Shown: positions 3,373-31,413 of the stretch, piece by piece
Position numbering within the stretch: position 1 is the first letter of the stretch
Layout of the letters: the number at the start of each line of letters is the position of its first letter
From: Asterias rubens
Taxonomy: Eukaryota
Assembly: GCF_902459465.1 (NCBI RefSeq)
Contig: NC_047070.1
Span: 16,368,001 to 16,432,000, forward strand
Direction of reading: 5' to 3'
DNA length: 64,000 nucleotides
Notes under the pieces: model-generated
The model's database searches: none
The model's input: the letters and a program-made list of their open reading frames with translations, nothing else
What the model was told of the DNA's origin: nothing
Program-made: the position numbers and the translations under genes

Positions 3373-5310
3373 ATGAGTTTCACCCGGCGACTAAAACTTT
3401 CGCTAGTCATCCTCACTATTCTCACCATTCTTTGGTACATGTTATTTGGAATGGCCCCATCAGCGAAAGTCTTTGCCAACTCGTTTTTGGGAGCTGGTCA
3501 TAGTGATCATTCAAATATGCGAGAAGTGCTGTCACTAGAGTCAGGAATAAAACCGACCGTAGTCACTGATTCGTGGGTTAAGACAGAGGAAAACACGGCA
3601 TCTTTAAAGACGATGTTAGCCTTCCACCAACATCCAGAACGTTCCCATATGAACAGTTCCGTCATTAGTGGTGTAGTTGTTTTAGTCTCATCTATGCCAC
3701 AAAACACACAACTCCGCAATGTGATAAGAAGCACATGGGCAGATGCGAAGACTTCCCAAAGATTGGGACTAACAGTTGTTTTCACTATGGGTTCACCTAA
3801 AGAAGAAATCAGCGGGCTGACCGACGAGAGTAGTACTTACAATGACATACTAATAGGTAACTTTACTGACGAGGTTCGGGCGTCTACTTTGAAACTTCTT
3901 CTTGGGTTGACGTGGGTGGCGCAGAAGTACCCGGATGCAAAGTTTGTTTTGCTTGTTGATGACCACACATTCGTGAATACTGAAAGGTTGTTGGGGTATT
4001 TGAAATCTTTGAAAGGCGAGGAGCTGGTGAGGGCGTGGCACGGGAGGCGATCGTCTGCAACGATACCAGTACGAGACCCCAAAAGCGTTTGCTACGTGTC
4101 AAAGGAACTCTACCCTAGAAAGGCTTTCCCTGAGTATTGTACATCAGAAGCTGGTTTCATTCTCACCATGGACGCCGTGGATCTCATCTTAGAACATTCA
4201 CGTCACACACCCCTAGTAACCCTTGATGACGTCTTTGTGTCAATCATTGCTGAGAAGCTTTCCTTCAGACTCTTTGACAATCATGCTTTTACTTTGACCA
4301 AAGTAAGTCAAGACGGATGCTCGTTGGAGAGTGTTTTAACTGCCAGAATGTCCATTGAAAATGCCACAGACTTATTGGTGATTTGGAACCACGTTAAGAG
4401 TGGGAGTTGTAGCAGGCCAGACTGGTTCCCAGGAGATGGAACCAACGACAGATATTTCAAGCAGTGCCTCAAAACGGTGATAACACACGGTGATATTTGT
4501 TTTGAAAGAACAGGGGAGAAAAAAGATGTATTCCTGCTATTGCTTGTCAGCTCCTTACCGAGTCACTTCGAGCGCAGGCAGGCCATTCGGGAGACATGGG
4601 GAAAGCAGAGGGTGTTCTTCGGGAAACAAACCGTCTTGCTCTTCACACTTGCTACAGAGACAAAGAACACGGCCGAGATACAAAAGAAAGTCAACGAAGA
4701 GAACGAAAGACACGGAGACATCATCCAAGCAGAATTCAGAGAGTCCTTCCACAACCTCACCTTGAAAGTGGTCTTCGGATTGAAATGGGTGACCGAAAAC
4801 TGCCCTCACACAAAGTACTACTACAAAGGAGACGACGACATGTTTGTGAATATGAAAAACATTATAACATTGCTGAACAAGACCAGTGAGTCGAACAAGA
4901 GGAGATTGTTTGTGGGCAATAGAATGTTAAGAAGTCGTCCAGTAACTATAAAAAAGAGCAAGTATTATGTCCCCAAAACCCAGTTTAATGAGGCATATTA
5001 TCCGCCATATTGCTCAGGTGGTGGTTACGTCATTTCAGGGAACCTCATTCCGGAGATGTTTAAAGCGTCTCGATGGATTCATGTTATACCAATCGACGAC
5101 GCATATCAAGGCATGCTGGCCAAAAAGGTAGGCTTGCGGGTGACTCATAACAAACAGTTTCTTGTGTTACCGAGAAAAGGCAAGAAAACAAGTCCAAGCA
5201 AATGCTCTCTAGAGCAGTGCGTGGTGAAGCATTACAAACACTTACGCTCATCTGTGGACCTTCGTACAGCATGGAGTATATACACCAATGACTCTATTCC
5301 ATGCATTTAG
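3373..5310 (+). CDS. GT31 beta-1,3-galactosyltransferase 1-like protein with two tandem Galactosyl_T domains (cluster gene 1, 645 aa)
   Basis: Single-exon ORF with an N-terminal type II TM (LSLVILTILTILWYMLFGM). Two GT31 repeats: RNVIRSTW...VDDHTFVN...FPEYC...DDVFV and RQAIRETW...HGDIIQAEFRESFHNLTLK...KGDDDMFVN...YPPYCSGGGY...DDAYQG. Family is clear; one-to-one orthology is not. Confidence 0.93.
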   Translation: MSFTRRLKLSLVILTILTILWYMLFGMAPSAKVFANSFLGAGHSDHSNMREVLSLESGIKPTVVTDSWVKTEENTASLKTMLAFHQHPERSHMNSSVISGVVVLVSSMPQNTQLRNVIRSTWADAKTSQRLGLTVVFTMGSPKEEISGLTDESSTYNDILIGNFTDEVRASTLKLLLGLTWVAQKYPDAKFVLLVDDHTFVNTERLLGYLKSLKGEELVRAWHGRRSSATIPVRDPKSVCYVSKELYPRKAFPEYCTSEAGFILTMDAVDLILEHSRHTPLVTLDDVFVSIIAEKLSFRLFDNHAFTLTKVSQDGCSLESVLTARMSIENATDLLVIWNHVKSGSCSRPDWFPGDGTNDRYFKQCLKTVITHGDICFERTGEKKDVFLLLLVSSLPSHFERRQAIRETWGKQRVFFGKQTVLLFTLATETKNTAEIQKKVNEENERHGDIIQAEFRESFHNLTLKVVFGLKWVTENCPHTKYYYKGDDDMFVNMKNIITLLNKTSESNKRRLFVGNRMLRSRPVTIKKSKYYVPKTQFNEAYYPPYCSGGGYVISGNLIPEMFKASRWIHVIPIDDAYQGMLAKKVGLRVTHNKQFLVLPRKGKKTSPSKCSLEQCVVKHYKHLRSSVDLRTAWSIYTNDSIPCI

Positions 5311-5812
5311 TGCAAACTGTTACAAATACCATACAACTGCTTTTAAAGCTAACTTTGTATCCTGCTGGAGAGATTTTCTAATCAACATCTTTAGCTTCTG
5401 ACCCCTTCTTTGACATTGTACATTGTTCGTGCATTGTTTAAATCACTTCCGGGAAGTGTTTGCCTTGCACTTCCATTAATGTGTTGACTACAGTTACATG
5501 CATGCATCAGTCATCCTGAAAAGAAAGGAAGAAACTTTTTAGAGACCAATGCTAAGCACAATTGAAGGTGTTAATTGAGCAACGCAATGCTTATATTAAG
5601 AATCAATGGTTTGAGGTAATTTTTAATAAATTTTATAGGGTGTAGTTTTTATGCTTTTTAAAATTAAAATAGTGAACAAATTTTTAGAATTTTTTTAACT
5701 CAAAATACATGTGTTGTTTAAAGTTTCACCTTTTAATATTTATTATATTTACATTAATTGTATCCATATTACTCTGTATTATACACTATTCGCAACATTG
5801 AATAAAAAACAA

Positions 5813-5967
5813 ATAATGAATGTTTTTCATTCGTGCAATGGTGCGAATATGTTCATTCGTTGAAAGCTGGAATGTTCCATTCAACTCGGCTCCGCCTCGT
5901 TGAATAGAACATTCCATTTTCAACTCATGAACATATTCGCACCATTGCACTCATAAACATTCATTAT
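5813..5967. mobile_element. 155-bp hairpin MITE
   Basis: Whole element is an imperfect palindrome (ataatgaatgttt...aaacattcattat); absent from the homologous site at ~18440. Confidence 0.75.
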
Positions 5968-5972
5968 GTGTA

Positions 5973-6003
<31 letters not shown>

Positions 6004-6017
6004 AATCAAAATGCCTG

Positions 6018-6290
6018 CCAAATCGACGACGCTTATCAAGGCTTGATGGCCAAAAAGATAGGCTTGCGGGTGACTCATAACACATGGTTTTGTGTGTTTG
6101 GGAGAAAAGACAATTTAGGCCCCAAATCATATAAAAGTAGGCAAGACGAATTGAGAAAGATTTAAACTAAATAGTATCTAGAACAGTGTGGTGGCGCATT
6201 CTGTGGACTTTTTACACACAGCATGGAGTACATACACCAATGGTTCTATTCCATGCATTATGTCAATCGCTTCAAGTACAACTGCTTATT
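6018..6290 (+). pseudogene. Degraded partial duplicate of the gene 1 3' end
   Basis: Encodes QIDDAYQGLMAKKIGLRVTHN, then a decayed copy of the gene 1 last codons and 3'UTR (cagcatggagtacatacaccaatggttctattccatgcatt). Confidence 0.85.
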
Positions 6291-6291
6291 A

Positions 6292-6668
6292 AGGCAGTGG
6301 ACACTATTGGTAATTACTCAAAATAGTTATTAGCATAAAACTTCACTTGGTAATGAGTAATGGGGAGAGGTTGATAGTATAAAACATTGTGAGAAACGCT
6401 CCCTCTGAAGTGACGTAGTTTTCGAGAAAGAAGTAATTTTCCACGAATTTGATTTCGAGACCTCAAGTTTAGAAATTGAGGTCTCGAAATCAACCATCTA
6501 AACGCACACAACTTCGTGTGACAAGGGTGTTTTTTCTTTCATTAATATCTCGCAACTTCGACGACCAATTGAGTTCAAATTTTCACAGGTTTGTTTTTGT
6601 ATGCATATGATAAGATACACCAACTGAGAAGATTGATCTTTGTCAATTACCAATAGTGTCTTCTGCCT
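6292..6668. mobile_element. Kolobok-type MITE (family A), full length
   Basis: TIR aggcagtggacactattggtaatt / aattaccaatagtgtc..ctgcct, TTAA flanks, 5'-AG terminus. TTAA plus RR termini is the Kolobok signature. Confidence 0.75.
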
Positions 6669-11755: not shown

Positions 11756-13732
11756 TCATTCCGGACATTTAATGGAGATGTCTGTAAAATTTGTCCATGC
11801 TTTGCGGAGGGAATCGGCAGTTCCATATTTATGTGACACCATAGATTCCTGGAGGAAGCATTTGTGCATGTTTTTGCCTTCACTCCCGAATACTTTGAAT
11901 GCGCTATTGTGCGTTATGGGCACCCCTATCCTCTTGGCAAGGATACCGTGGTACGCGTCGTCGATCGGTATGATCGAAGTCCGTTGGGCTGCTTCATACA
12001 TTGCCGGAATGGTACTTCCTGAAATGACGTAACCTCCTCCGGAGCAATATGGCGGATAAAATTTCCCCCTGTATTGTTTTTTTGACACGTGGTACCTACT
12101 CTTAGCGTCGTCTATATGGATGCTTGTCCACATGGCGTTACCTATGAACATTGCCTTGTGTTTTTCTTTACTCAACTTTTCCAAGAATTGTATGATGTTT
12201 TTCATATTCACAAACATGTCGTCGTCTCCTTTGTAGTAGTACTTTGTGTGAGGGCAGTTTTCGGTCACCCATTTCAATCCGAAGACCACTTTCAGGGTGA
12301 GGTTGTGGAAGGACTCTCTGAATTCTGCTTGGATGATGTCTCCGTGTCTTTCGTTCTCTTCGTTGACTTTCTTTTGTATCTCGGCTGTGTTCTTTGTCTC
12401 TGTAGCAAGTGTGAAGAGCAAGACGGTTTGTTTCCCGAAGAACACCCTCTGCTTTCCCCATGTCTCCCGAATGGCCTGCCTGCGTTTGAAGTTACTCTGC
12501 AGGGAGCTAATCAGGAGCATTAGGAACACATCCCTTCTCTTGCCCTTCTCAAAACATACATCATCTTGGGAAACAACCTCCTTCAGACACTTCTCAAAGT
12601 ACTTGTGGTTGGATACGTTACTTGGAAGCACCAAATCTAACCTGGGGTCGACGCAGTTTCTTCTGCTCTCAGGGCTGCTTATGTTTCTGTAAACTTCAAA
12701 GAACGTATCAGCTTTTCGAAATCTCATTGCGGCTGTAAGAACATTTTCCGGGAGACAACCGCCCATTTTCAAATCGCTCTGTGTGAATGCATTGTTGTTG
12801 ACAAGTCTGAAAGAAAGCTTCTCAGCAATGATTGACACAAAGACGTCATCAAGGGTTACTAGGGGTGCGTGACGTGAATGTTCTAAGATGAGATCCACGG
12901 CGTCCATGGTGAGAATGAAACCAGCTTCTGATGTACAATACTCAGGGAAAGCCTTTCTAGGGTAGAGTTCCTTTGACACATAGTAAACGCTTTTGGGGTC
13001 TCGTACTGGTATCGTTGCAGACGATCGCCTCCCGTGCCACGCCCTCACCAGCTCGTCGCCTTTCAAAGACTTTAAATAGTTATTTACTGTTTCTGAGTTT
13101 ACGAACATGTGGTCACTGCCGTACATAACAAACTTTACGCCAGAGCATTTTCGAGCCGCCCACTTCAACCCGAGGAGGAGTTTCAAAGTAGAGGACCGAG
13201 TCCCCCCTCGAAAGTTCCCGAATAAAATATCATTGAAAGTTTCACTCTCGTTCGCAATAGGTCCTTTGAGCTTGTCCTCCGCTAGACCTACTACAAATAT
13301 AACTTTAAACCCATATTTTGTGTTAATCGTTGTGTTGGCCCAGGTGTCACGAATCACATGGCGGGTTTGGACTTTGTCTGGACTGGACGTTAAAAGGATT
13401 ACCACGGTCACACTGTCCTTAATATGCGGACGGACTCGGTTTAAGCATTCAGGCGCTATATCGAGAGTTAACACTTTCTTGAGGTATGCTGTGTTAACGT
13501 CAGTCTTATTCCACAGATTAGTCACGGTGGTCGGTCCAATTGTGGACTTATGGGAGGCGGTCAACTCGACCTGCAACCGAGTGGTGGCGACATCTTTGAT
13601 CGAGAAGGGAAGGACGTTAACTTTTGATTGATCCTTGATAAAGTTAGTGTAAATAAAGGCCGCAGTAGCGTGAAAGGCATAGATGCAGATTGCGACGAAG
13701 AGGGCGTATTTACGGCGGTTTTTTATAGCCAT
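11756..13732 (-). CDS. GT31 B3GALT1-like protein, two tandem domains (gene 2, 658 aa from the first ATG)
   Basis: The ORF-track start at 13819 is GTG; the first ATG is 13732 (MAIKNRRKYALFVAICIY, basic tail then TM). Motifs RHVIRDTW, YGSDHMFVN, RQAIRETW, KGDDDMFVN, YPPYCSGGGY, DDAYHG. Confidence 0.92.
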   Translation of the reverse strand: MAIKNRRKYALFVAICIYAFHATAAFIYTNFIKDQSKVNVLPFSIKDVATTRLQVELTASHKSTIGPTTVTNLWNKTDVNTAYLKKVLTLDIAPECLNRVRPHIKDSVTVVILLTSSPDKVQTRHVIRDTWANTTINTKYGFKVIFVVGLAEDKLKGPIANESETFNDILFGNFRGGTRSSTLKLLLGLKWAARKCSGVKFVMYGSDHMFVNSETVNNYLKSLKGDELVRAWHGRRSSATIPVRDPKSVYYVSKELYPRKAFPEYCTSEAGFILTMDAVDLILEHSRHAPLVTLDDVFVSIIAEKLSFRLVNNNAFTQSDLKMGGCLPENVLTAAMRFRKADTFFEVYRNISSPESRRNCVDPRLDLVLPSNVSNHKYFEKCLKEVVSQDDVCFEKGKRRDVFLMLLISSLQSNFKRRQAIRETWGKQRVFFGKQTVLLFTLATETKNTAEIQKKVNEENERHGDIIQAEFRESFHNLTLKVVFGLKWVTENCPHTKYYYKGDDDMFVNMKNIIQFLEKLSKEKHKAMFIGNAMWTSIHIDDAKSRYHVSKKQYRGKFYPPYCSGGGYVISGSTIPAMYEAAQRTSIIPIDDAYHGILAKRIGVPITHNSAFKVFGSEGKNMHKCFLQESMVSHKYGTADSLRKAWTNFTDISIKCPE

Positions 13733-17989: not shown

Positions 17990-18300
17990 ATACTATAAAA
18001 TAAACAAATATAAAATGAATAGGGTAGATGGCCTTAGCTTTCGATCCAATCCGGACCTTCTTCAGAGGCATAAAACAAGTACAAACAAATACATATCCAT
18101 TTATAGAAAAAGAGAGGGGGAAAGGGATTAAGGAAAGGATCCAGAAAGAAGCAGGAAAATAACAGCCAATCAAAGTTCCTATTTCAGAAACAATATTGGT
18201 GGCTATAAACCAATAGGAGTGAAGTGGCGAGGACAAAGGATGTTTAGAATGAAAGGAAGGGTTACTGGACCATAAAAGCGGTAAATGTATTGTTCGACAA
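17990..18300 (-). mobile_element. Penelope-like element terminal fragment
   Basis: Pyrimidine-rich tract ending in the hammerhead motif; present in only one arm of the inverted duplication. Confidence 0.45.
18031..18069 (-). ncRNA. Minimal type I hammerhead ribozyme motif (Penelope-like element associated)
   Basis: Minus strand GCCT-CTGAAGA-A-GGTCC-ggatt-GGATC-GAA-AGCT-A-AGGC. Stem I GCCT/AGGC, conserved core, 5-bp stem II, palindromic stem III AGCT, CUA cleavage triplet. Confidence 0.65.
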
Positions 18301-18395
18301 TCTTTTCTCCCAAACACACAAAACCATGTGTTATGAGTCACCCGCAAGCCTATCTTTTTGGCCATCAAGCCTTGATAAGCGTCGTCGATTTGGCA
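18301..18395 (-). pseudogene. Inverted copy of the same GT31 3' relic
   Basis: Reverse complement of 6015-6110 (IDDAYQGLMAKKIGLRVTHNTWF). Confidence 0.85.
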
Positions 18396-18403: not shown

Positions 18404-18435
<32 letters not shown>

Positions 18436-18937: not shown

Positions 18938-20149
18938 CTAAATGCATGGAATAGAGTCATTGGTGTATATACTCCATGCTGTACGAAGGTCCACAGATGA
19001 GCGTAAGTTTTTGTAATGCTTCACCACGCACTGCTCTAGAGAGCATTTGCTTGGACTTGTTTTCTTGCCTTTTCTCGGTAACACAAGAAACTGTTTGTTA
19101 TGAGTAATCCGCAAGCCTACCTTTTTGGCCAGCATGCCTTGATATGCGTCGTCGATTGGTATAACATGAATCCATCGAGACGCTTTAAACATCTCCGGAA
19201 TGAGGTTCCCTGAAATGACGTAACCACCACCTGAGCAATATGGCGGATAATATGCCTCATTAAACTGGGTTTTGGGGACATAATACTTGCTCTTTTTTAT
19301 AGTTACTGGACGACTTCTTAACATTCTATTGCCCACAAACAATCTCCTCTTGTTCGACTCACTGGTCTTGTTCAGCAATGTTATAATGTTTTTCATATTC
19401 ACAAACATGTCGTCGTCTCCTTTGTAGAAGTACTTTGCGTGAGGGCAGTTTTCGGTCACCCATTTCAATCCAAAGACCACTTTCAGGGTGAGGTTGTGGA
19501 AGGACTCTCTGAATTCTGCTTGGATGATGTCTCCGTGTCTTTCGTTCTCTTCGTTGACTTTCTTTTGTATCTCGGCTGTGTTCTTTGTCTCTGTAGCAAG
19601 TGTGAAGAGCAAGACGGTTTGTTTCCCGAAGAACACCCTCTGCTTTCCCCATGTCTCCCGAATGGCCTGCCTGCGCTCGAAGTGACTCGGTAAGGAGCTG
19701 ACAAGCAATAGCAGGAATACATCTTTTTTCTCCCCTGTTCTTTCAAAACAAATATTACCGTGTGTTATCACCGTTTTGAGGCACTGCTTGAAATATCTGT
19801 CGTTGGTTCCATCTCCTGGGAACCAGTCTGGCCTGCTACAGTTCCGTCCATTTAATTCCATATTTAAGCATTCCTGTCCTCTATCGAGAGTTAACACTTT
19901 CTTCAGGGATGTTGTGTTAACGTCAGTCTTATTCAACGTATTTGTCATGGTGGTCGGTCCAATTGTGGACTTTGTGGAGTTGGTCAACTCGACCTGCGAC
20001 CGACCGATGTCGACATCTTTGAACGAGAGTACATGTACCTTATGTACCTTAATGATGTCAATGTAAATAAGGGTCGCAACCATTGCCATAATGGAGTATG
20101 AGCATATTGCGAGGATGAGAACGTATTTGTGGTGGTTTGTTATAGCCAT
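18938..20149 (-). CDS. GT31 B3GALT1-like protein, single domain, chimeric (gene 3, 403 aa)
   Basis: First ATG at 20149 (MAITNHHKY; track start 20158 is GTG). TM and stem resemble gene 2. The catalytic domain from CSRPDWF onward is almost identical to gene 1 domain 2. Confidence 0.9.
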   Translation of the reverse strand: MAITNHHKYVLILAICSYSIMAMVATLIYIDIIKVHKVHVLSFKDVDIGRSQVELTNSTKSTIGPTTMTNTLNKTDVNTTSLKKVLTLDRGQECLNMELNGRNCSRPDWFPGDGTNDRYFKQCLKTVITHGNICFERTGEKKDVFLLLLVSSLPSHFERRQAIRETWGKQRVFFGKQTVLLFTLATETKNTAEIQKKVNEENERHGDIIQAEFRESFHNLTLKVVFGLKWVTENCPHAKYFYKGDDDMFVNMKNIITLLNKTSESNKRRLFVGNRMLRSRPVTIKKSKYYVPKTQFNEAYYPPYCSGGGYVISGNLIPEMFKASRWIHVIPIDDAYQGMLAKKVGLRITHNKQFLVLPRKGKKTSPSKCSLEQCVVKHYKNLRSSVDLRTAWSIYTNDSIPCI

Positions 20150-22959: not shown

Positions 22960-23190
22960 TTATGTTTTGGTATACTGTTCTGGCACCCAGCCTCTGGCAT
23001 CCGGCCTCCTTGAGCTTGCGTTTATATGCTTAGTACAACACGGGAGTCACCCGACCAAAAATAAACCCTGTGCTATATCATTCAACGCAAATTCTCGAAA
23101 ATTGTTTTGGTTGTGTTCTGGAACCCAGCCTCTTCGACCCTGCATGCGTATACATGCTTAGTACAACACGGAAGTCACCCGACCAAAAGG
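22960..23190. repeat. Diverged tandem duplication, period ~140 bp
   Basis: gttttgg...ttctgg(c/a)acccagcctct...atgcttagtacaacacgg.agtcacccgaccaaaa occurs twice. Confidence 0.75.
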
Positions 23191-23862
23191 GAGGATCACA
23201 ACGGCGGATGGGCGGACAAAAGGTAATGAGTGAACCAATCCGGATAAACCACCTGCGAAACCGTCCAACGAGTCACTCTGCAACGCTCAGGCAGATTTCT
23301 AGGTAGGCCGAGGTGAGCATGCCCGCCTCTAACCAACCTGCAAGAGGCCCGTGTTCAACCGTGTACAGCCGATACAATATACAGGGTCAAACGTCCAACG
23401 CACTGCTTACCACAGAATTCTTCGCTTACGGAACCCTTGTAGAACACAACTATGTGATACGTAAGCGCAGAATTCCCCGGTAAGCAGAGCCATGGAATTG
23501 GGACCAGGTCTGACACGGCTCTGAGCTCAGAGCCGACTCAGAGCAGACCACACCCATCGCGCCACGAAATCAAGAATTCGAACAAATCGCTCTGTCTCCT
23601 ACTGAACCACCGGGCACCGTCTCAAGCAGCCAATCAGACGACTCGCTAGAGCGAGTTCGGAAGAGGCTTTTTGAAGTCTGGCAAACTGACGTCTGAAACG
23701 ACACAATCGTGTTGAATTCTATACCAGGATGCCATATCAATGGACCTTCTAATTTCAATCTAAGATGGTGCAGATTACCGCTTTTATTCTCTTTTTTTAT
23801 TTACCAGGGGCTTCGAATTGAAGTAATGCAACAATATGTTATGTTTAACCCTGTAGTAGACA

Positions 23863-23868
23863 TTTATT
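23863..23868 (-). terminator. Probable polyadenylation signal of gene 4
   Basis: AATAAA on the minus strand in a flank homologous to 29016-29021 (gene 5). Confidence 0.5.
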
Positions 23869-24393
23869 TCATCCAAAAAGTAAGCATGTTAAAAACAACA
23901 CAAAACACGACTAAAAAGATGCTTTAAACACTTAATTTTCGATTATAAACGATTCTTGTTTAAACAAAACATTGGCTTCATTAGCATAAAAACTTACTTG
24001 GTAACGAGCAATGGAGAGCTGTTGATAGTGTAAAACACTGTGATGTTAGGAACGGCTAATTAGAAGTGAAAAGAAAGTAATTTATCACTACAATATTTGA
24101 AGTTAACTTGAGACCTCACTTGAGGTCTAGAATCTAAGCATCTGAAAGCACAAAACTAGTGCGACAAAGGTGCAACTTCGCGCAATTTTCAGAGGTTTGT
24201 TAATTTTGCAAATGTTGAGAACCACCAGTTCATGTTCACCAAGTACACCAAGTACACCAGCTCTTCTCATTTGCAAGTTAGAAGACTGGCCTTAAACAAT
24301 AACACCAAAGGTGCCCAGTGCCTTTAAATCGGTTAATTTTAGACTGGCGTCTACAGTCGCTCAAGTTTTTGGTGTTCAATCACCTTTTATGTG

Positions 24394-26538
24394 TCACGAA
24401 ACCTCCGGGCAGTCCTCAGCTGGAGTGGTGTAGTTTCTCCATACTGCATTCAATATATTAGAGTTCTTAAACCCATGGACCACCATAACCTCTCTCAACG
24501 AACACCCGTCCGTCTTGGCACCCCAGTTTTTGAACCCCGGGTGGGCGACTGGCTTCACCCCTATTTTACTCATGAGAATACCCTGGTAGGCGTCATCGAT
24601 GGGTATAAAGGCAGTCTCCAGTGACTTACGGTACATCTGTGGAATGATGTCTGTTGACATGATGTACCCACCACCCGAGCAGTACGGGGGAAAGTATCGG
24701 CCACTGTACAGTCTTTCTGGCACGTAATACTTGGAGTTCTCACGAGTAACGCGGACACTTCTATGGAGTACACTCCCAAGGAAATACCTAGACTTTGCCA
24801 GTCCCTTGGCTCGGCTCTCCTTCAAGTGGGACACAATGCGATCGAAATTGACAAACATGTCATCGTCACCTTTGTACATGTATTTGGCGTGGGGGCAGTT
24901 TTGAGTCACCCACCGGAGTCCCATGACTACCTTGAGAGTTAAGTTATGGAAGGATTCGGTAAAGTCTGCTTGGATGATGTCACCAAACTTGTCGTCCTCT
25001 TGCTTGACTCGCTGCTGTATAAGTTTAACATCAGTCTGGGTGTGGCCCATCACGAATAAAAGTTTGATGTTCTCCCCCTGTCTCATCAAGTTACGCCCCC
25101 AAGTTTCCCGGATGGTACTACGCAGCTCAAAGTGTCTCGGCAACGTACTGATGAGTACGAGGATGAAAACACTCTCCTCGTTCCCAGCTTTGTCGTAGCA
25201 AATATCCGGATGGTTCAGCCGCATTTGGAGCGTCTTGTCCAAGTAAGGTAAATTGTCAATGTGGTTTTTGAGCACCAAACTCAAATCCGGATCGGGACAG
25301 TTCCGGCGGAACTCAGGATCGCTGAACTTCGTCCAGGTGCTCTGGAGTTGTTCCGCCGACCGTACACCCCGTGACGTGACGACTCTGTTGAGCTCACACG
25401 CATCCTTGGCCTGGTTACCGTAACTGAATGAGTTATCGTTCTTTATTAGAATGTTGGCTTTCTTGGCTAGAACTCCCATGTAGACATCTGGTAGTGGCAG
25501 GAGAGGCTCACCCCAAGACAAGGCTAAAAGTTCCCTGGCGGCATCCACGCTAAGCACGTAACCAGCCTCAATAGTGCAGAAGTCTGGATAACGAGTCTCT
25601 GGATAGAGCTTCCTCGATACATAGTACCGACTTCCTGCGTCGCGCTCTGGCATCTTCCCCTGAGTGAGTCGACCAATCCACATTTTCACACCGTCCTTTT
25701 CGTTTGTTTCTCGTAGAAGTTTGACAAGACGCTCGTAGATGATGAACATGTGATCATCACCGATGAAGACGTATTTGGCGGAGGGGCAATTTGACATCAC
25801 CCAGTCTATCCCGAGGAGCAGCTTCAAAGTGGAGTTACCCACACTGTCCGTGAAGCTTCCCATCAAGATATCGTCGTGCCGTTCATTCTCGAGGAACACG
25901 GCCGAGTTGACGGTACCGTCCGTCGGTTGACCGAGAACGAACAGCGTGAGTACTCCCATCTGATGCGCGTAGGCGTCGTTTGCCCACGTCTCACGGATCG
26001 CCATTCGGAAGTCTACTTCCGTTGGGCGTGTGGTGATGAGAGATACCATGAAGGCATCCTGACACTTCTTCTTATCGTGGCTGTGATCGAACACCGAATC
26101 CAGCACTCGATGGAAGAGGGCGCTATTCAAGCCCAAGTTGGGTGCCAAATTAGTTTGATTTCTCTTCATTTCGTCCACCGGACGTGCCCTACCACTTTCA
26201 CTATCTGATTTGGACTCGCTGCTACGATTCTGCACACTAGGAATATTATTGTCTATTCGCTTTGTGTCACTCTGTGATGCCTCCCCACCCATCCGCCTTA
26301 ACACCCCTTCAAAGTCTCGCTTATCTTTTCTATTCCTTCGCTCCATGTTCAACCTGTTCAACGTTGCGTCTGGTTCGTGATCCTGACCGTTCATGATGGT
26401 GACGTCAGCAGGGATGAATTTATCCATGTACACCAGCACGATCATAACCTTGGCTGCGTATATACACATAGTGAGAAGGAGATATAACTCCAGTTTTGAG
26501 CGTAGTGATGTCATACTTGGGCTGATATAGTTCAACAT
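24394..26538 (-). CDS. GT31 B3GALT1-like protein, two tandem domains (gene 4, 714 aa)
   Basis: TM (LYLLLTMCIYAAKVMIVLVYM), long stem, RMAIRETW/IGDDHMF/YPDFC/LPDVYMG, then RSTIRETW/KGDDDMFVN/FPPYCSGGGY/IDDAYQG. Confidence 0.93.
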   Translation of the reverse strand: MLNYISPSMTSLRSKLELYLLLTMCIYAAKVMIVLVYMDKFIPADVTIMNGQDHEPDATLNRLNMERRNRKDKRDFEGVLRRMGGEASQSDTKRIDNNIPSVQNRSSESKSDSESGRARPVDEMKRNQTNLAPNLGLNSALFHRVLDSVFDHSHDKKKCQDAFMVSLITTRPTEVDFRMAIRETWANDAYAHQMGVLTLFVLGQPTDGTVNSAVFLENERHDDILMGSFTDSVGNSTLKLLLGIDWVMSNCPSAKYVFIGDDHMFIIYERLVKLLRETNEKDGVKMWIGRLTQGKMPERDAGSRYYVSRKLYPETRYPDFCTIEAGYVLSVDAARELLALSWGEPLLPLPDVYMGVLAKKANILIKNDNSFSYGNQAKDACELNRVVTSRGVRSAEQLQSTWTKFSDPEFRRNCPDPDLSLVLKNHIDNLPYLDKTLQMRLNHPDICYDKAGNEESVFILVLISTLPRHFELRSTIRETWGRNLMRQGENIKLLFVMGHTQTDVKLIQQRVKQEDDKFGDIIQADFTESFHNLTLKVVMGLRWVTQNCPHAKYMYKGDDDMFVNFDRIVSHLKESRAKGLAKSRYFLGSVLHRSVRVTRENSKYYVPERLYSGRYFPPYCSGGGYIMSTDIIPQMYRKSLETAFIPIDDAYQGILMSKIGVKPVAHPGFKNWGAKTDGCSLREVMVVHGFKNSNILNAVWRNYTTPAEDCPEVS

Positions 26539-27126
26539 TTAAATCAGTATAACAACCTTCTCCAGTTGTATCAGTGTTAGCTTCTCATTTTAAGAGCTCC
26601 ATTGTAACACTGGCATCAGTTGTTAGGAATCTCCTGTAAAACACAGTGAAAATGAAACATCAACATTTAACAATTACAAAAAAATGCAAAGGAATGTCAC
26701 GGTATACTTTTTGTAAATGTCAAATACCAGTATATGACTTGGTGTTTCCCAATATATGCACAAAATATCCAAACATCTGAAAATCTGGGCTCATGTGTTT
26801 ATTTTGCATTGTTTTTACAATGCTATTGTTTGTTGTCTTTGGTGCAATGTAGGTCTCCACCGGGTGCTTGTTTTTATCATTGTTTCCCCGTGCAACTTCT
26901 ATGTTTTGTCATTCCCCTTTTCGGTGGTTTGTTTGTCTACTCCCTCTGTGTATTGTTATTGCTTGCTGGGTGTCAAAGTCCCTCCAAATATTGGGCCAAT
27001 TCTCCTGTATTTTCTGGTGTAATGTTTACACTCTGCAATTGTTTGATGTCCTTAGAGCAGTTGGTCCCTACCGGGTGCTTCAGTTTGTAACAATGTTTCA
27101 TCGTGCAATTTTTAAATAAATATTAT

Positions 27127-27385
27127 CCCCCTTTTTTGCTGTATATAAAATAGTATATTTTAAACTTGTCTTTATGTTTTGTATTAGCCAGTAGCATAGG
27201 AAACAAAGGGCCCTAGGCCTCAGTTGTTAGGTTAACTTGTTTAGTTCCTGGCAAAAGGTTTCCCCCTTTTTTGCTTTATACAAAATAGTATATTTTAAAC
27301 TTCTCTCTTTGTTTTTATTAGCCAGTAGCATAGGAAACAAATGGCCATAGGCCTCAGTTATTACGTTACTTGTTTAGTTCCTGGC
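27127..27385. repeat. Tandem duplication, period ~135 bp
   Basis: ccccttttttgct...aaaatagtatattttaaactt...ttagccagtagcataggaaacaaa...ttagttcctggc occurs twice. Confidence 0.85.
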
Positions 27386-27523
27386 ATGTGTTGCTGGCTC
27401 TATTGTATGTTCCCGTGTCCCTTTCATTATTGTCTAGCTCTGTTCTGTATGATTGTATTGTATGTTTGAATGCCGAATAAATAATAATAACAATAAAAAT
27501 AATCAAAGAAATTTAAAAAAGGG

Positions 27524-27790
27524 TCACATGATAAGGGAATATACGCTGACTACGATGGTGAGAGCGTATTTTCGACGGTTATTCATAGCCATGGGAAGTA
27601 CCAATTATTGGACAATAATTTCCTTAAAATGTGTTTTTCTTCTTTTCTCTTCAAAGGTTACAAAGAAAGCTGGGAAGGTCAATTCCACAATGGCATCAAT
27701 CAAGCGTAAACTGGGTCAATGCACAGTGAGCACGTGAGTTATACCATGTTGTCTTGAATCAAAGTTTCACCATGTTGTCTTAAACGAAAC
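27524..27790 (-). pseudogene. Relic 5' end of a gene 2/3-type GT31 exon
   Basis: ATG at 27592 gives MAMNNRRKYALTIVVSVYSLIM* (gene 2 is MAIKNRRKYALFVAICIY). The upstream flank agttataccatgttgtct matches 13947 onward. Confidence 0.8.
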
Positions 27791-28096
27791 TGCAAATTTG
27801 ACTAGAACAACAATAGCAACAACAACAACAATAACAACGAAAACAGCAACAACAACAACTTTAACATATACTGATATTCCAGCAAGAAAAGTGGTATTTC
27901 TCTCAATATATTGTAAATGGGAATAGCCATGTTGATTTACTATGACATCGCACATGACGTAGTACCGGGTATGTTTGCAAACCTAGTAAAAACTACACCC
28001 ACTACTCTATGTTGACCCCCCCCCCCCAAACCACACTCACGCAAATACAATTGTGTTTATTGGAACAAACATATCAGAAATTAATAATCTTGCATT

Positions 28097-28704
28097 TTGT
28101 TTTCGTCAAACGTTGTATGCTTACCTTGTCGTCTTTCGCCAATTTGTGGTGGGTTGATTATGACTACGATGAGTGAGTATTGCGACTATTTTCGGGTAAA
28201 ATCCTCCACGGACTGAAAGTTTTTCCCGCAGCTTCTTCGGCACGTATAAAATGGCAGCCTTTTCTTTTATTATCAAATATTACTAAACACGTTGGAGAGT
28301 TTATGCACTCTGAATGGGAATCTAGTGACGTTGTGTTCACGTCACGTATTCAACTGCGAAAGAAAAAATAAACCGCCTCACTGAACTTGAAAACAAGAGG
28401 CCCCTGAACGAGCATATTATTTTTGTGAACAAACTTGTATAGAAATCTGGAACTATGGTTTTTGTCACGAACTCAGTATGCCTATGTATTGTCCTTGGTC
28501 TCTATTGTAATATATGTAAAACAACTTTGTATCCTGTTCTGGAAATCTGGGTAGCCAACTTTGTAGAAGGTTGGGTACTTTTCGTACCCGCTGTGGCAGG
28601 GGATTATGGCCCCCGCAGATTCGGTCCCATAATGGCGATTTATGTACAAACTTCTTCTGATAGCGCCCTCTTTTGATTCCTCCTCCCCGCACGTTATTTC
28701 CCCA
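28097..28704 (-). promoter_or_regulatory. Putative promoter and non-coding first exon upstream of gene 4
   Basis: Homologous module, highly similar to 22172-22745; donor edge 28125; acceptor ttttacag at 26634. Confidence 0.5.
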
Positions 28705-29015
28705 CCCCCCCCCCCCCCAAAAAAAAAAGGGGGAGGGGGCTTCCCTTAAATATCACTTGCTGAGGTGCTGTAGTTTTTGAGAAGTGAGAAATACAAGTCA
28801 CGAAAGTTATACAGAACCACAGCAAGTAATATTTCACGGTTAGCTTTCTACTATCATTACCTTCAAATGGTGTAAGTTTAATGTTAATCTGTGTACATTG
28901 TGTTTTGTTTTGCAAAAAGCACACAAGTCCGTTAAACCTCTTACTCATAAACAATAACACTTTCACTAAACTTATTATTGGAGCAATGCAACAGTATGGT
29001 ATAGTAGACATTAAT

Positions 29016-29021
29016 TTTATT
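29016..29021 (-). terminator. Probable polyadenylation signal of gene 5
   Basis: AATAAA on the minus strand ~270 nt after the stop, conserved with the gene 4 copy. Confidence 0.5.
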
Positions 29022-29289
29022 TCATACAAAAAGTAGGCTGTTAAAAAAACATGGACGACTCGACCATTAGGCATGTTAAAAATAATACAAAACTAATAGG
29101 TGCTTTAAAATACTTAGTTTTCGTTTAAAAACGATTCTTATAAAAACATTACTTTGGCTTTGCAGTTTGTAAAAAAAAAAAAAAACTAAAGAGGCGCTAA
29201 CAAAATGCAGTTTAAAAGTCCTATTCGGTTTTTGTTTTTAGACTGGCGTCCACAGTCGCTCAAGTGTTTGATGTTCAATCATCTTTGTG

Positions 29290-31413
29290 TCACGAAACCT
29301 CCGGGCAGTCCTCAGCTGCTGGAGTGGTGTAGTTTCTCCATACTGCATTCATTGTATCAGAGTTCTTAAATCCATGGACCACCATAACCTCTCTCAACGA
29401 ACACCCGTCCGTCTTGGCACCCCAGTTTTTGAACCCCGGGTGGGCGACTGGCTTCACCCCTATTTTACTCATGAGAATACCCTGGTAGGCGTCATCGATG
29501 GGTATAAAGGCAGTCTCCAGTGACTTACGGTACATCTGTGGAATGATGTCTGTTGACATGATGTACCCACCACCCGAGCAGTACGGGGGAAAGTATCGGC
29601 CACTGTAGAGTCTTTCTGGCACGTAATACTTGGAGTTCTCACGCGTAACGCGGACACTTCTATAGAGTACACTCCCAAGGAAATACCTAGACTTTGCCAG
29701 TCCTTTGGCTCGGCTCTCCTTCAAGTGAGACACAATGCGATCGAAATTGACAAACATGTCATCGTCACCTTTGTACATGTATTTGGCGTGGGGGCAGTTT
29801 TGAGTCACCCACCGGAGTCCCATGACTACCTTGAGAGTTAAGTTATGGAAGGACTCGGTAAAGTCTGCTTGGATGATGTCACCAAACTTGTCGTCCTCTT
29901 GCTTGACTTGCTGCTGTATAAGTTTAACATCAGTCTGGGTGTGGCCCATCACGAATAAAAGTTTGATGTTCTCCCCCTGTGTCATTAAGTTACGCCCCCA
30001 AGTTTCCCGGATGGTACTACGCAGCTCAAAGTGTCTCGGCAACGTACTGATGAGTACGAGGATGAAAACACTCTCCTCGTTCCCAGCTTTGTCGTAGCAA
30101 AAATCCGGATGGTTCAGACGCATTTGGAGTGTCTTGTCCAAGTAAGGTGAATTGTCAATGTGCTTACTGAGCACCAAACTCAAATCCGGATCGGGACAGT
30201 TCCGGCGGAACTCAGGATCGCTGAACTTCGTCCAGGTGCTCTGGAGTTGTTCCGCCGACCGTACACCCCGTGACGTGACGACTCTGTTGAGCTCACACGC
30301 ATCCTTGGCCTGGTTACCGTAACTGAATGATTTATCGTTCGTTATTAGAATGTTGGCTTTCTTGGCTAGAACTCCCATGTAGACATCTGGTAGTGGCAGG
30401 AGAGGCTCACCCCAAGACAAGGCTACAAGTTCCCTGGCGGCATCCACGCTAAGCACGTAACCAGCCTCAATAGTGCAGAAGTCTGGATAACGAGTCTCTG
30501 GATAGAGCTTCCTCGATACATAGTACCGACTTCCTGCGTCTCGCTCAGGCATCTTCCCCTGAGTGAGTCGACCAATCCACATTTTCACACCGTCCTTTTC
30601 GTTTGTTTCTCGTAGAAGTTTGACAAGACGCTCGTAGATGATGAACATGTGATCATCACCGATGAAGACGTATTTGGCGGAGGGGCAATTTGACATCACC
30701 CAGTCTATCCCGAGGAGCAGCTTCAAAGTGGAGTTACCCACACTGTCCGTGAAGCTTCCCATCAAGATATCGTCGTGCCGTTCATTCTCGAGGAACACGG
30801 CCGAGTTGACGGTACCGTCCGTCGGTTGACCGAGAACGAACAGCGTGAGTACTCCCATCTGATGCGCGTAGGCGTCGTTTGCCCACGTCTCACGGATCGC
30901 CATTCGGAAGTCTACTTCCGTTGGGCGTGTGGTGATGAGAGATACCATGAAGGCATCCTGACACTTCTTCTTATCGTGGCTGTGATCGAACACCGAATCC
31001 AGCACTCGATGGAAGAGGGCGCTATTCAAGCCCAAGTTGGGTGCCAAATTAGTTTGATTTCTCTTCATTTCGTCTTCCGGACGTGCCCTACCACCTTCAC
31101 TAACTGATTTGGACTCGCTGCTACAATTCTGCACACTAGGAATATCATTGTCCAATCGCTTTGTGTCACTCTGTGATGCCTCCCCACCCATCCGCCTTAA
31201 CACCCCTTCAAAGTCTCGCTTATCCTTTCTATTCCTTCGCTCCATGTTCAACCTGTTCAACGTTGCATCTGGTTCGTGATCTTGACCGTTCATGATGGTG
31301 ACGTCAGCAGGGATGAATTCATCCATGTACACTAGCACGATCATAACCTTGGCTGCGTAGATGCACACAATCAGAAGGAGGATGAACTCCATTTTGGAAC
31401 ACAGTGACGTCAT
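29290..31413 (-). CDS. GT31 B3GALT1-like protein, two tandem domains (gene 5, 707 aa; close paralog of gene 4)
   Basis: Same motifs as gene 4; near-identical CDS offset by ~4899 bp. Confidence 0.93.
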   Translation of the reverse strand: MTSLCSKMEFILLLIVCIYAAKVMIVLVYMDEFIPADVTIMNGQDHEPDATLNRLNMERRNRKDKRDFEGVLRRMGGEASQSDTKRLDNDIPSVQNCSSESKSVSEGGRARPEDEMKRNQTNLAPNLGLNSALFHRVLDSVFDHSHDKKKCQDAFMVSLITTRPTEVDFRMAIRETWANDAYAHQMGVLTLFVLGQPTDGTVNSAVFLENERHDDILMGSFTDSVGNSTLKLLLGIDWVMSNCPSAKYVFIGDDHMFIIYERLVKLLRETNEKDGVKMWIGRLTQGKMPERDAGSRYYVSRKLYPETRYPDFCTIEAGYVLSVDAARELVALSWGEPLLPLPDVYMGVLAKKANILITNDKSFSYGNQAKDACELNRVVTSRGVRSAEQLQSTWTKFSDPEFRRNCPDPDLSLVLSKHIDNSPYLDKTLQMRLNHPDFCYDKAGNEESVFILVLISTLPRHFELRSTIRETWGRNLMTQGENIKLLFVMGHTQTDVKLIQQQVKQEDDKFGDIIQADFTESFHNLTLKVVMGLRWVTQNCPHAKYMYKGDDDMFVNFDRIVSHLKESRAKGLAKSRYFLGSVLYRSVRVTRENSKYYVPERLYSGRYFPPYCSGGGYIMSTDIIPQMYRKSLETAFIPIDDAYQGILMSKIGVKPVAHPGFKNWGAKTDGCSLREVMVVHGFKNSDTMNAVWRNYTTPAAEDCPEVS

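What the first reader, a model, noticed from the sequence alone, without database searches (positions are those of the whole stretch)
3373..31413. Cluster of two-domain GT31 enzymes whose first domain is a conserved pseudo-catalytic or re-wired module
Seen: four genes carry two GT31 domains in one exon. Domain 2 keeps KGDDD and the C-terminal His (VKHY, VSHK, VVHG). Domain 1 always ends the motif in His (LVDDH, YGSDH, IGDDH), loses the preceding Lys and lacks the C-terminal His (LTARM, LTAAM, VTSRG). It keeps RxxIRxTW, the D(I)L.G.F.D..TLK segment and the cysteines, with no stops, even between very divergent paralogs. Established: in GT31/GT-A enzymes the DxD and C-terminal His bind Mn2+ and UDP-sugar. 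Inference: domain 1 is a selected non-catalytic acceptor-binding or regulatory module, or the shared D-to-H change re-creates a metal site with new chemistry. That would make these tandem or processive glycan-building enzymes, possibly a lineage-specific glycan or glycoside pathway.
Basis: partly seen in the sequence, partly recalled or inferred. Interest (0 to 1): 0.75.

Follow-up and report, generated by a model that had tools for sequence, protein, structure and literature searches.

The report
Sea-star tandem GT31 glycosyltransferase cluster
A sea-star gene cluster encodes membrane enzymes with two sugar-transferase domains, of which the second looks fully active and the first is an ancient, strongly conserved copy that has lost its metal-binding residues and probably now holds the sugar chain rather than building it.

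Summary
G1, G2, G4 and G5 each encode a type II membrane protein with two PF01762 (GT31) domains in one uninterrupted ORF. G3 is a paralog that lacks domain 1. RNA contigs show that G4 is transcribed and spliced, with its whole CDS in one exon.

Domain 2 (D2) is a canonical B3GNT2-like domain: KGDDD, GGG, IDDAY and the C-terminal His are invariant.

Domain 1 (D1) is B3GALT5-like, with three changes:
- The Mn-binding Asp is His.
- The Mn-binding His is Arg (Ala in G2).
- The donor-sugar contacts corresponding to Lys154 and Glu242 of B3GALT5, and the first G-loop Gly, are lost.

D1 keeps the uracil-binding pair, a basic residue at the alpha-phosphate position, the acceptor-stacking aromatics and the catalytic-base Asp.

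All echinoderm D1 domains form one clade, and the tandem architecture occurs in all five echinoderm classes. D1 is as constrained as D2 (Acanthaster vs Patiria omega 0.077 vs 0.066).

The His is not universal. Brittle stars have Asn, and other subfamilies have Glu, Lys, Ser or Val.

Best reading (about 0.6): D1 is a selected pseudo-glycosyltransferase that binds glycan or nucleotide in cis, as in B3GLCT. A re-wired active D1 remains possible (about 0.25). Neutral decay is refuted.

An earlier scan note (s1-150663, unchecked) reports another such gene 18 kb upstream of the window.

The parts
3373..5310 (+). G1: tandem-GT31 gene, 645 aa. Signal-anchor at residues ~8-27. D1 at nt 3625-4407 (VDDH 3955-3966, LDDVF 4222-4236, LTARM 4336-4350). 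D2 at nt 4408-5307 (KGDDD 4825-4839, IDDAY 5092-5106, VVKHY 5221-5235).
   Evidence: The A. amurensis ortholog P0018 is intact.
11756..13732 (-). G2: tandem-GT31 gene, 658 aa from the ATG at 13732. D1 at nt 12668-13432 (GSDH 13109-13120, LDDVF 12839-12853, LTAAM 12725-12739). D2 at nt 11759-12667 (KGDDD 12218-12232, MVSHK 11828-11842). This is the most degenerate D1 in the window: the first Asp is Ser and the C-His position is Ala.
   Evidence: The A. amurensis ortholog P0017 is intact.
18938..20149 (-). G3: 403-aa paralog lacking D1. Its N-terminus is G2-like and its D2 is 96-100% identical in DNA to G1's D2. It is intact in A. amurensis too.
24394..26538 (-). G4: tandem-GT31 gene, 714 aa. 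TM helix at residues 10-39 and a disordered stem at 40-135. D1 at nt 25294-26091 (GDDH 25750-25761, LPDVY 25480-25494, VTSRG 25366-25380). D2 at nt 24397-25293 (KGDDD 24859-24873, IDDAY 24586-24600, MVVHG 24472-24486).
24008..26632 (-). G4 coding exon as seen in transcript contigs: 94 nt of 5' UTR, the whole CDS, and the 3' UTR up to a repeat.
   Evidence: contigs of 2.7 kb in four runs
26633..28123 (-). G4 intron of 1491 nt, GT..AG on the minus strand, removed in transcript contigs.
   Evidence: table 5: the joint is seen in all four runs
28124..28272 (-). G4 5' exon joined to the coding exon, upstream of the annotated ATG. Its true 5' end was not determined.
   Evidence: tables 5 and 8
29290..31413 (-). 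G5: recent duplicate of G4 (96% aa identity), 707 aa. D1 at nt 30193-30990 (GDDH 30649-30660, VTSRG 30265-30279). D2 at nt 29293-30192 (KGDDD 29758-29772, MVVHG 29371-29385).
6019..6259 (+). Relic fragment of a D2 C-terminus downstream of G1.
   Evidence: tblastn, 51-80% identity to G1 residues 573-645
18195..18389 (-). Relic fragment of a D2 C-terminus downstream of G3.
   Evidence: tblastn, 48% identity to G1 residues 574-639
36981..46624 (+). Exons of a GDA1_CD39 (nucleoside-diphosphatase family) gene. It is the conserved neighbour of the G4 ortholog in Patiria and Acanthaster, which marks G4/G5 as the positional orthologs.

Best explanation
The cluster encodes Golgi-type (type II, signal-anchored) proteins built from two GT31 GT-A domains of different ancestry.

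D2 is a canonical B3GNT-like inverting beta-1,3-glycosyltransferase and is very probably Mn-dependent and active. This is inferred from motifs and not assayed.

D1 is an ancient module of single origin, related to B3GALT5 and brainiac-like enzymes. It has lost both Mn2+ ligands (Asp to His/Asn, His to Arg), the donor-sugar contacts (Lys154 and Glu242 equivalents) and the first G-loop glycine. It has kept the uracil-binding Asp/Lys pair, a basic residue at the alpha-phosphate position, the two aromatic residues that stack on the acceptor sugar, and the Asp that hydrogen-bonds the acceptor hydroxyls.

The most likely mechanism is that D1 no longer transfers sugar. Instead it uses the old acceptor/nucleotide cleft as a lectin-like binding site, acting in cis to hold or present the glycan substrate or product for D2. 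The inactive N-terminal GT-A domain of B3GLCT does this for its catalytic GT31 domain.

Shown here: the architecture, G4 expression, the single origin of D1, strong purifying selection on D1, and which residues are kept or lost.

Inferred: that D1 does not catalyse, what ligand it binds, and the sugar specificity of D2.
For: Architecture and expression:
- PF01762 occurs twice per protein.
- D2 best matches B3GNT2 (E 3e-51). D1 best matches B3GALT5 (E 1e-24 to 1e-34).
- The AF2 model has mean pLDDT 83 and pTM 0.70, with both domains and the linker confident.
- Foldseek top hits are B3GNT2 and B3GALT5.
- A spliced transcript carries the whole G4 CDS.

Distribution and origin:
- Intact two-domain orthologs exist in asteroids, echinoids, ophiuroids, crinoids and holothurians.
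- All 52 D1 tips form one clade (support 0.90), separate from the D2 clade.

Selection:
- Acanthaster vs Patiria: D1 omega 0.077, D2 0.066, stem 0.285.
- Holothurian pairs: dN is 0.10-0.15 for D1, 0.075-0.09 for D2 and 0.13-0.24 for the stem, with dS saturated.

Residue pattern:
- In G4 orthologs from all five classes, K239, R299, Y305, F320, T322, G326, D351 and R390 are invariant.
- The Lys154 equivalent is never Lys, the Glu242 equivalent is never acidic, and the first G-loop Gly is mostly Glu/Asp.
- In 80 canonical single-domain GT31 proteins these three positions are K in 74/80, E/D in 79/80 and G in 78/80.
- Base, alpha-phosphate and acceptor positions score 0.867 in conservation against a D1 mean of 0.483 (permutation p 1.5e-4). 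Metal, donor-sugar and ribose positions score 0.419 (p 0.73).

Precedent:
- B3GLCT has an inactive N-terminal GT-A domain that is required for acceptor binding (PMC13597200).
- COSMC and CHPF are GT31 pseudo-enzymes (PMC7185993, PMC8022947).
Against: - No biochemical data exist, so inactivity is inferred from motifs only.
- D1 is far less degenerate than the B3GLCT N-domain. It keeps the first two Asp of the DxD, the catalytic-base Asp, the full C-terminal segment and the uracil-binding pair.
- DxH is an active motif in GT27 and GT60. C-His is dispensable in several active GT-A families. GT14 replaces the metal with basic side chains (PMC7185993). The invariant Arg390 with Arg299 and Arg/Lys304 could do the same.
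- D1 is as constrained as D2, which is also what an enzyme would show.
- The sister 'brn-like' mollusc group also lacks the Lys154 equivalent yet keeps DDD and His, so that loss alone does not imply inactivity.
- The subsite classes in the permutation test were chosen after seeing the data.
Confidence: 0.6

Rival explanations
1. D1 is an active glycosyltransferase with a re-wired donor site. The site would be His-based like the DxH of GT27/GT60, or metal-independent like GT14, with Arg390, Arg299 and Arg/Lys304 neutralising the diphosphate. The protein would then be a bifunctional two-step or polymerising enzyme, analogous to LARGE1, CHSY and K4CP, that makes an alternating beta-1,3-linked glycan.
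For: - The correlated swap removes a negative charge (Asp to His/Asn) and adds a positive one (His to Arg, invariant across five classes).
- The catalytic-base Asp351, D261/D262, the uracil pair and the acceptor aromatics are retained.
- D1 omega equals D2 omega.
- DDH plus Arg also occurs in a hemichordate domain that keeps Lys154 and xED (P0052 and P0057 domain 2). It lies in a separate clade, so the pairing probably arose twice.
- The literature gives precedents for active DxH and for metal-free GT-A enzymes (PMC7185993).
Against: - Near-universal donor-sugar contacts are lost: the Glu242 equivalent is Pro/Gly/Ala in 12 of 12 orthologs, the Lys154 equivalent is hydrophobic in 12 of 12, and the first G-loop Gly is replaced.
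- The ribose-contact positions (Thr64 and Gln69 equivalents) and the Tyr128 equivalent vary freely.
- His is replaced by Asn in ophiuroids.
- G1/G2-type D1 domains do not conserve these sites: G1 has DDH/R, G2 has SDH/A and P0054 has NDN/G.
- Subfamily B D1 domains have N/P-D-E/N and Gly instead.
Confidence: 0.25
2. D1 is a purely structural or chaperone-like partner, a built-in COSMC/CHPF-type scaffold needed for folding, stability, dimerisation or Golgi retention of D2. It would have no ligand-binding role.
For: - The GT31 family repeatedly uses inactive paralogs as partners, such as COSMC and CHPF (PMC7185993, PMC8022947).
- The AF2 model gives a confident linker (pLDDT 88-96 for residues 400-440), which suggests a fixed D1-D2 packing.
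- D1 varies widely at metal and donor positions among subfamilies.
Against: - Former cleft residues (K239, R299, Y305, F320, D351, R390) are invariant across five classes and significantly more conserved than the D1 average. A pure scaffold would not need this.
- G3, which lacks D1, is kept as an intact ORF in both Asterias species. D2 can therefore exist without D1.
Confidence: 0.12
3. D1 is a decaying, neutrally evolving remnant, or the two-domain ORFs are annotation or assembly artefacts.
For: Short-range omega values between the window and A. amurensis are moderate (0.28-0.67) and rest on few changes.
Against: - D1 omega is 0.077 between valvatid sea stars.
- D1 is 45-50% identical between classes and shows no stops in 36+ orthologs.
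- The ORFs are uninterrupted in the raw sequence.
- A single transcript contig spans both domains.
Confidence: 0.02

Closest known systems
B3GLCT (human beta-1,3-glucosyltransferase, GT31): inactive N-terminal GT-A domain plus catalytic C-terminal GT31 domain (PMC13597200)
   Same: Same domain order in one polypeptide. The N-domain lacks a canonical DxD and the C-terminal His. The C-domain is a canonical GT31. In B3GLCT the inactive domain is needed for acceptor binding.
   Different: - The B3GLCT N-domain also lacks the xED base and the whole HV-3/C-His segment, and it is sterically closed to nucleotide. The echinoderm D1 keeps the base Asp, two DxD Asp residues, the uracil pair and a full-length C-terminus with Arg.
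- The two B3GLCT domains are each other's closest relatives. Here D1 (B3GALT5/brn-like) and D2 (B3GNT-like) belong to different GT31 clades.
- There is no detectable orthology. The PDB sequence searches returned only B3GNT2, B3GALT5 and B3GALT6.
Human B3GNT2 (PDB 6wmm, 7jhi) and B3GALT5 (PDB 8zwp), single-domain GT31 enzymes
   Same: D2 is about 31% identical to B3GNT2, with KGDDD, GGG, DD-type xED and C-His. D1 aligns end to end with B3GALT5 (E 1e-34). Both have the GT-A fold.
   Different: The human enzymes have one domain. D1 has His/Arg in place of Asp158/His285 and lacks the Lys154 and Glu242 equivalents.
C1GALT1C1 (COSMC) and CHPF/CHPF2, GT31 pseudo-enzymes acting with an active paralog
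   Same: A catalytically degenerate GT31 paralog is retained by selection as a partner of an active GT31.
   Different: Those act in trans as separate polypeptides. COSMC has lost both DxD and xED (PMC7185993). Here the partner is fused in cis and keeps the base Asp.
Bifunctional two-GT-A polymerases (LARGE1, CHSY1/3, E. coli K4CP)
   Same: Two GT-A domains sit in one type II or soluble protein. These give weak global Foldseek hits (ranks 31-50).
   Different: Both domains of those enzymes carry intact catalytic motifs and come from different CAZy families. Here both domains are GT31 and D1 lacks the metal ligands.
GT27/GT60 (DxH motif) and GT14 (metal-independent GT-A)
   Same: DxH replaces DxD in active GT27/GT60. 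GT14 uses basic side chains in place of the metal (PMC7185993). D1 shows a DxH-like motif and an invariant Arg at the C-His position.
   Different: These are different CAZy families with no homology beyond the fold. GT27 keeps the C-terminal His. Whether D1 binds metal or donor at all is untested.

Membership tests
CAZy GT31 / Pfam PF01762 Galactosyl_T | Significant match of each domain to PF01762 or to solved GT31 enzymes | tested here: met
   two stretches per protein, 262-277 bits against a cutoff of 23. D1 alone vs B3GALT5 gives E 1e-24 to 1e-34. D2 vs B3GNT2 gives E 3e-51.
CAZy GT31 / Pfam PF01762 Galactosyl_T | GT-A fold | tested here: met
   AF2 model with pLDDT 83. Foldseek TM (target-normalised) is 0.7-0.9 to B3GNT2 and B3GALT5.
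Catalytically competent GT31 (canonical) | DxD motif whose last Asp binds Mn2+ | tested here: not met
   This row is for D1, which has DDH / SDH. D2 meets it: KGDDD is invariant in all 38 family members.
Catalytically competent GT31 (canonical) | C-terminal His as second Mn2+ ligand | tested here: not met
   This row is for D1, which has Arg (G1, G4, G5) or Ala (G2) at the His285 position. D2 meets it: His688 is present in at least 90% of members.
Catalytically competent GT31 (canonical) | xED motif with catalytic-base Asp | tested here: inconclusive
   For D1, the base Asp is retained (D351, at least 90% of all D1). The preceding acidic residue is Pro in G4/G5 and Asp in G1/G2. D2 has IDDAY invariant.
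Catalytically competent GT31 (canonical) | Transferase activity with a UDP-sugar | not testable with these tools
   Needs an enzyme assay.
Two-domain GT-A enzymes with an inactive N-terminal domain (B3GLCT type) | N-terminal GT-A domain lacking metal ligands, fused to a canonical C-terminal GT31 | tested here: met
Two-domain GT-A enzymes with an inactive N-terminal domain (B3GLCT type) | N-domain lacks the catalytic base and the nucleotide site. Acceptor binds in the inter-domain cleft. | tested here: not met
   D1 keeps the base Asp and the uracil-binding Asp/Lys. Cleft geometry and acceptor binding are not testable here because no model coordinates were available.
Bifunctional tandem GT polymerases (LARGE1 / CHSY / K4CP type) | Both GT-A domains carry intact catalytic motifs | tested here: not met
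   D1 lacks the Mn ligands and the Lys154, Glu242 and G-loop equivalents.
Metal-independent GT-A (GT14-like mechanism) | No DxD. Basic side chains contact the diphosphate in place of the metal. | tested here: inconclusive
   Invariant R390, R299 and R/K304 sit at the C-His, Arg192 and Lys197 positions. Their geometry and function were not tested.

The most novel reading that the evidence does not exclude
D1 is a working, metal-independent or His/Arg-rewired GT31 domain. The coupled Asp-to-His/Asn and His-to-Arg swap would convert a Mn-dependent GT-A site into one that neutralises UDP with arginine. This pairing probably arose a second time in hemichordate multi-GT31 proteins. The echinoderm proteins would then be single-chain bifunctional beta-1,3 polymerases, a B3GalT-like domain plus a B3GnT-like domain, making a lineage-specific repeating glycan.
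Probability: 0.2. Interest if true: 0.78.

Novelty: new variant of a known kind. Interest (0 to 1): 0.5.

Why it matters
Pseudo-enzyme domains fused to active glycosyltransferases have only recently been shown to be functional. The B3GLCT structure was published in 2026.

This family offers a second and much less degenerate GT31 example:
- It is conserved across all five echinoderm classes.
- Its domain 1 is as constrained as the catalytic domain.
- It comes with natural variants that make it easy to test: G3 lacks D1, orthologs differ in His versus Asn, and paralogs differ in Arg versus Ala or Gly.

It could show how a GT-A active site is repurposed into a glycan-binding site. If D1 proves active, it could instead show how metal dependence is lost within GT31.

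All members are annotated 'uncharacterized' or carry automatic names. In the passages that my term searches returned, the GT31 survey (PMC8022947) lists no GALT-GALT architecture.

Tried and rejected
- Short-range dN/dS between the window and A. amurensis. There are only 3-14 changes per domain, omega is 0.15-0.7 for both domains, and gene conversion confounds it. It cannot separate D1 from D2.
- Holothurian pairs. Synonymous sites are saturated, so only dN could be compared.
- Foldseek of the whole model against the PDB. It finds single-domain GT31 enzymes. Global matches to two-domain GTs are weak (TM 0.2-0.25), so nothing can be said about domain arrangement.
- Model coordinates are not exposed to scripts. 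I could not measure the distance or orientation between the D1 pocket and the D2 site, or check where Arg390 points.
- RNA evidence for G1. RNA-labelled runs hold only 34% of its words, which could come from tracts shared with G2/G3. Runs holding 99% are of unknown type.
- Rfam at gathering threshold over the whole window gave no hits.
- Literature search for 'GT31' with 'pseudoenzyme' gave no papers.
- Internal tandem duplication as the origin of D1/D2 is rejected. D1 and D2 are 27-31% identical and fall in different GT31 clades, with single-domain proteins between them.

Full report
**Observation**

The window holds five long ORFs between 3.3 and 31.4 kb.
- G1 (3373-5310, +), G2 (11756-13732, -), G4 (24394-26538, -) and G5 (29290-31413, -) each contain two independent Pfam PF01762 Galactosyl_T stretches.
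- G3 (18938-20149, -) has one.
- Each protein starts with a hydrophobic signal-anchor.

An AlphaFold2 model of G4 was built on a 38-sequence family alignment. It has mean pLDDT 83 and pTM 0.70. It shows a TM helix at residues 10-39, a disordered stem at 40-135, then two confident alpha/beta domains joined by a confident linker. Foldseek places both domains with B3GNT2 and B3GALT5.

**Mapping to solved enzymes**

By sequence, D2 is closest to human B3GNT2 (E 3e-51) and D1 is closest to human B3GALT5 (E 1e-24 for G1, 1e-34 for G4). The B3GALT5 structure paper (PMC11969544) assigns these roles:
- Asp158 and His285 are the Mn2+ ligands.
- Asp243 is the general base.
- Asp126 and Lys134 bind uracil.
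- Thr64, Gln69 and Ser157 bind ribose.
- Tyr128, Lys154, Asp156 and Glu242 bind the donor galactose.
- Lys197 binds the alpha-phosphate.
- Trp198 and Phe213 stack on the acceptor.

Reading the HMMER alignment column by column gives the G4 D1 equivalents:

| B3GALT5 | G4 D1 |
|---|---|
| Thr64 | T169 |
| Gln69 | E174 |
| Asp126 | D231 |
| Tyr128 | V233 |
| Lys134 | K239 |
| Lys154 | I259 |
| Asp156 | D261 |
| Ser157 | D262 |
| Asp158 | H263 |
| Lys197 | R304 |
| Trp198 | Y305 |
| Phe213 | F320 |
| Glu242 | P350 |
| Asp243 | D351 |
| His285 | R390 |

The 'missing C-terminal His' is in fact an Arg, or Ala in G2.

**Expression and gene structure**

Transcript contigs from four runs of the same organism cover 24008-26632 without a break. 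They join across a 1491-nt GT..AG intron (minus strand) to an upstream exon at 28124-28272. G4 is therefore a spliced mRNA with a 5' exon upstream of the annotated ATG and the entire two-domain CDS in one exon.

G1 expression could not be settled.

**Distribution**

A full-length search found 36 relatives of 520-780 aa. Every named one is an echinoderm: Patiria, Acanthaster, Asterias amurensis, Lytechinus, Diadema, Amphiura, Antedon, Anneissia and Holothuria. All are 'uncharacterized' or carry automatic names.

A. amurensis has the syntenic cluster, with three adjacent G4-like genes (a fourth on the same chromosome) and orthologs of G3, G2 and G1. Synonymous divergence from the window is about 0.03-0.05, so the window comes from a close relative of that species.

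In Patiria and Acanthaster the G4 ortholog is single-copy and lies between a GDA1_CD39 gene and an actin gene. The window has GDA1_CD39 exons at about 37.0-46.6 kb. G4/G5 are therefore the positional orthologs, and G1-G3 are lineage-specific additions.

**Origin of D1**

An exhaustive search with D1 alone found 7023 GT31 relatives. I cut all domains out of 190 proteins with a family HMM, read their motif columns and built a tree of 289 domains.
- All echinoderm D1 domains form one clade (52 tips, support 0.90).
- That clade is distinct from the D2 clade, with single-domain proteins between them.
- Its sister is a mollusc 'brn-like' group that keeps DDD and His.
- D1 and D2 of the same protein are only 27-31% identical.

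The architecture therefore arose once, before the echinoderm classes split, from two different GT31 lineages and not by a recent internal duplication.

D1 branches are longer than D2 branches.

Multi-GT31 proteins also exist elsewhere. Hemichordates have 4-7 domains per predicted protein, and scallops and a centipede have them too. Several of these mix canonical and degenerate domains. I did not verify those gene models.

**Selection**

| Comparison | D1 | D2 | Stem |
|---|---|---|---|
| Acanthaster vs Patiria, omega (dS about 1.1-1.2) | 0.077 | 0.066 | 0.285 |
| Three holothurian sequences, dN (dS saturated) | 0.10-0.15 | 0.075-0.09 | 0.13-0.24 |

No ortholog has a stop.

Comparisons between the window and A. 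amurensis have too few changes to be informative. They are also confounded by gene conversion. G1 and G2 share two near-identical tracts, at CDS nt about 631-870 and 1210-1450, on a 50-60% background. G3 carries G1's D2.

**What is kept and what is lost in D1**

D2 has KGDDD, GGG and IDDAY invariant and the C-terminal His in at least 90% of family members.

In the G4 ortholog group, which spans five classes, the D1 pattern is as follows:
- Invariant: K239, R299, Y305, F320, T322, G326, D351 and R390.
- Nearly invariant: D261 and D262.
- Position 263 is His, except Asn in brittle stars.
- The Lys154 equivalent is never Lys.
- The Glu242 equivalent is Pro, Gly or Ala.
- The first G-loop Gly is usually Glu or Asp.
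- The Thr64, Gln69 and Tyr128 equivalents vary.

In 80 canonical single-domain GT31 proteins, Lys154 is K in 74, Glu242 is E/D in 79 and the G-loop Gly is G in 78.

A permutation test compared two sets of positions with the D1 mean of 0.483:
- Base, alpha-phosphate and acceptor positions score 0.867 (p 1.5e-4).
- Metal, donor-sugar and ribose positions score 0.419 (p 0.73).

These classes were defined after seeing the data, so this is descriptive support and not a blind test.

In the other D1 subfamilies the metal positions differ again, with N/P-D-E/N plus Gly, or T-D-S/V. The G1/G2 type is not even internally conserved: DDH/R, SDH/A and NDN/G.

**Interpretation**

The cleanest reading is that D1 ceased to be a canonical transferase before the echinoderm radiation. 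Selection has kept it as a binding module that uses the former acceptor and nucleotide subsites, working in cis with the active D2.

The closest precedent is B3GLCT. Its inactive N-terminal GT-A domain is essential for acceptor binding (PMC13597200). COSMC and CHPF are trans-acting GT31 analogues (PMC7185993, PMC8022947).

D1 differs from the B3GLCT N-domain in being much less degenerate. It retains the base Asp, two DxD Asp residues, the uracil pair and a full C-terminus.

For that reason I keep a substantial rival, that D1 is active with a re-wired site.
- DxH is the normal motif of active GT27 and GT60.
- C-His is dispensable in several active families.
- GT14 replaces the metal with basic residues (PMC7185993).
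- Asp-to-His/Asn together with His-to-Arg is the charge pattern expected for a shift to metal independence.
- The same DDH...Arg pair appears in a hemichordate domain that keeps Lys154 and xED. That domain lies in a separate clade, so the pairing probably arose independently.

What weighs against activity is the loss of Glu242, Lys154 and the G-loop glycine, together with the free variation at the ribose and Tyr128 positions.

The sugar specificity of D2 (a DD-type xED, as in B3GNTs) and any link to a specific echinoderm glycan are inference only.

**Novelty**

The concept of a pseudo-GT-A domain fused to an active GT31 is known, and so is GT31 gene clustering. Three things are new here:
- A five-class, single-origin echinoderm family of GT31-GT31 proteins.
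- A D1 that is as constrained as D2.
- A conserved, coupled replacement of both metal ligands.

In the passages my term searches returned, the animal GT31 survey lists X/GALT and FRINGE/X architectures but no GALT-GALT. No paper in the searchable library paired GT31 with 'pseudoenzyme'.

I rate this a new variant of a known kind, of moderate interest. It becomes high interest only if D1 proves catalytic.

Noticed in passing
window 18938-20149 (G3), with L001:1745-2956: G3 is an in-frame chimera: a G2-like N-terminus joined to a G1-identical D2, with D1 cleanly absent. It is intact at 403 aa in A. amurensis too. The two species' copies are unusually divergent (dN 0.078, dS 0.125, omega 0.63). 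It serves as a natural D1-deletion control.
   Followed up: partly
window 3373-5310 vs 11756-13732: G1 and G2 share two sharply bounded tracts of 96-100% DNA identity (G1 CDS nt about 631-870 in D1 and about 1210-1450 in D2) on a 50-60% background. This indicates gene conversion between inverted paralogs.
   Followed up: yes
window 23820-24190: A short element at the 3' end of the G4 transcript has word depths of 2,000-24,000 in the RNA-type runs, against 25-67 for the gene. Many different loose ends flank it. It is an abundant, transcribed interspersed repeat bounding the 3' UTR.
   Followed up: no
window 36981-46624 (+): A multi-exon GDA1_CD39 (nucleoside-diphosphatase family) gene lies next to the GT31 cluster. 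The same neighbour is conserved in Patiria and Acanthaster. Some enzymes of this family hydrolyse the UDP released by Golgi glycosyltransferases, so the linkage may be more than synteny.
   Followed up: partly
window 2951-3248: A 298-nt run of N lies 125 nt upstream of the G1 start codon. The G1 5' UTR and promoter are therefore unresolved. I left the gap untouched.
   Followed up: no
window 6019-6259 (+) and 18195-18389 (-): Short relics of a D2 C-terminus lie just downstream of G1 and G3. They are remnants of earlier duplications or rearrangements in the cluster.
   Followed up: partly
window 18031-18069: An earlier scan note proposes a minimal hammerhead ribozyme here. An Rfam search of the whole window at gathering thresholds returned no family. 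I did not run the more permissive search.
   Followed up: partly
P0047-P0053, P0057, P0059 (Ptychodera flava, Saccoglossus kowalevskii): Hemichordate predicted proteins carry 4-7 GT31 domains that alternate canonical (KDDD..ED..H) and degenerate versions. One domain has KDDH..ED..Arg in both genera. The gene models are not verified.
   Followed up: partly
L003:4677-17307 vs window 24394-31413: Copy number of the G4-type gene differs between close relatives. A. amurensis has three adjacent copies, with a fourth listed on the same chromosome, while this window has two. Patiria and Acanthaster have one.
   Followed up: partly
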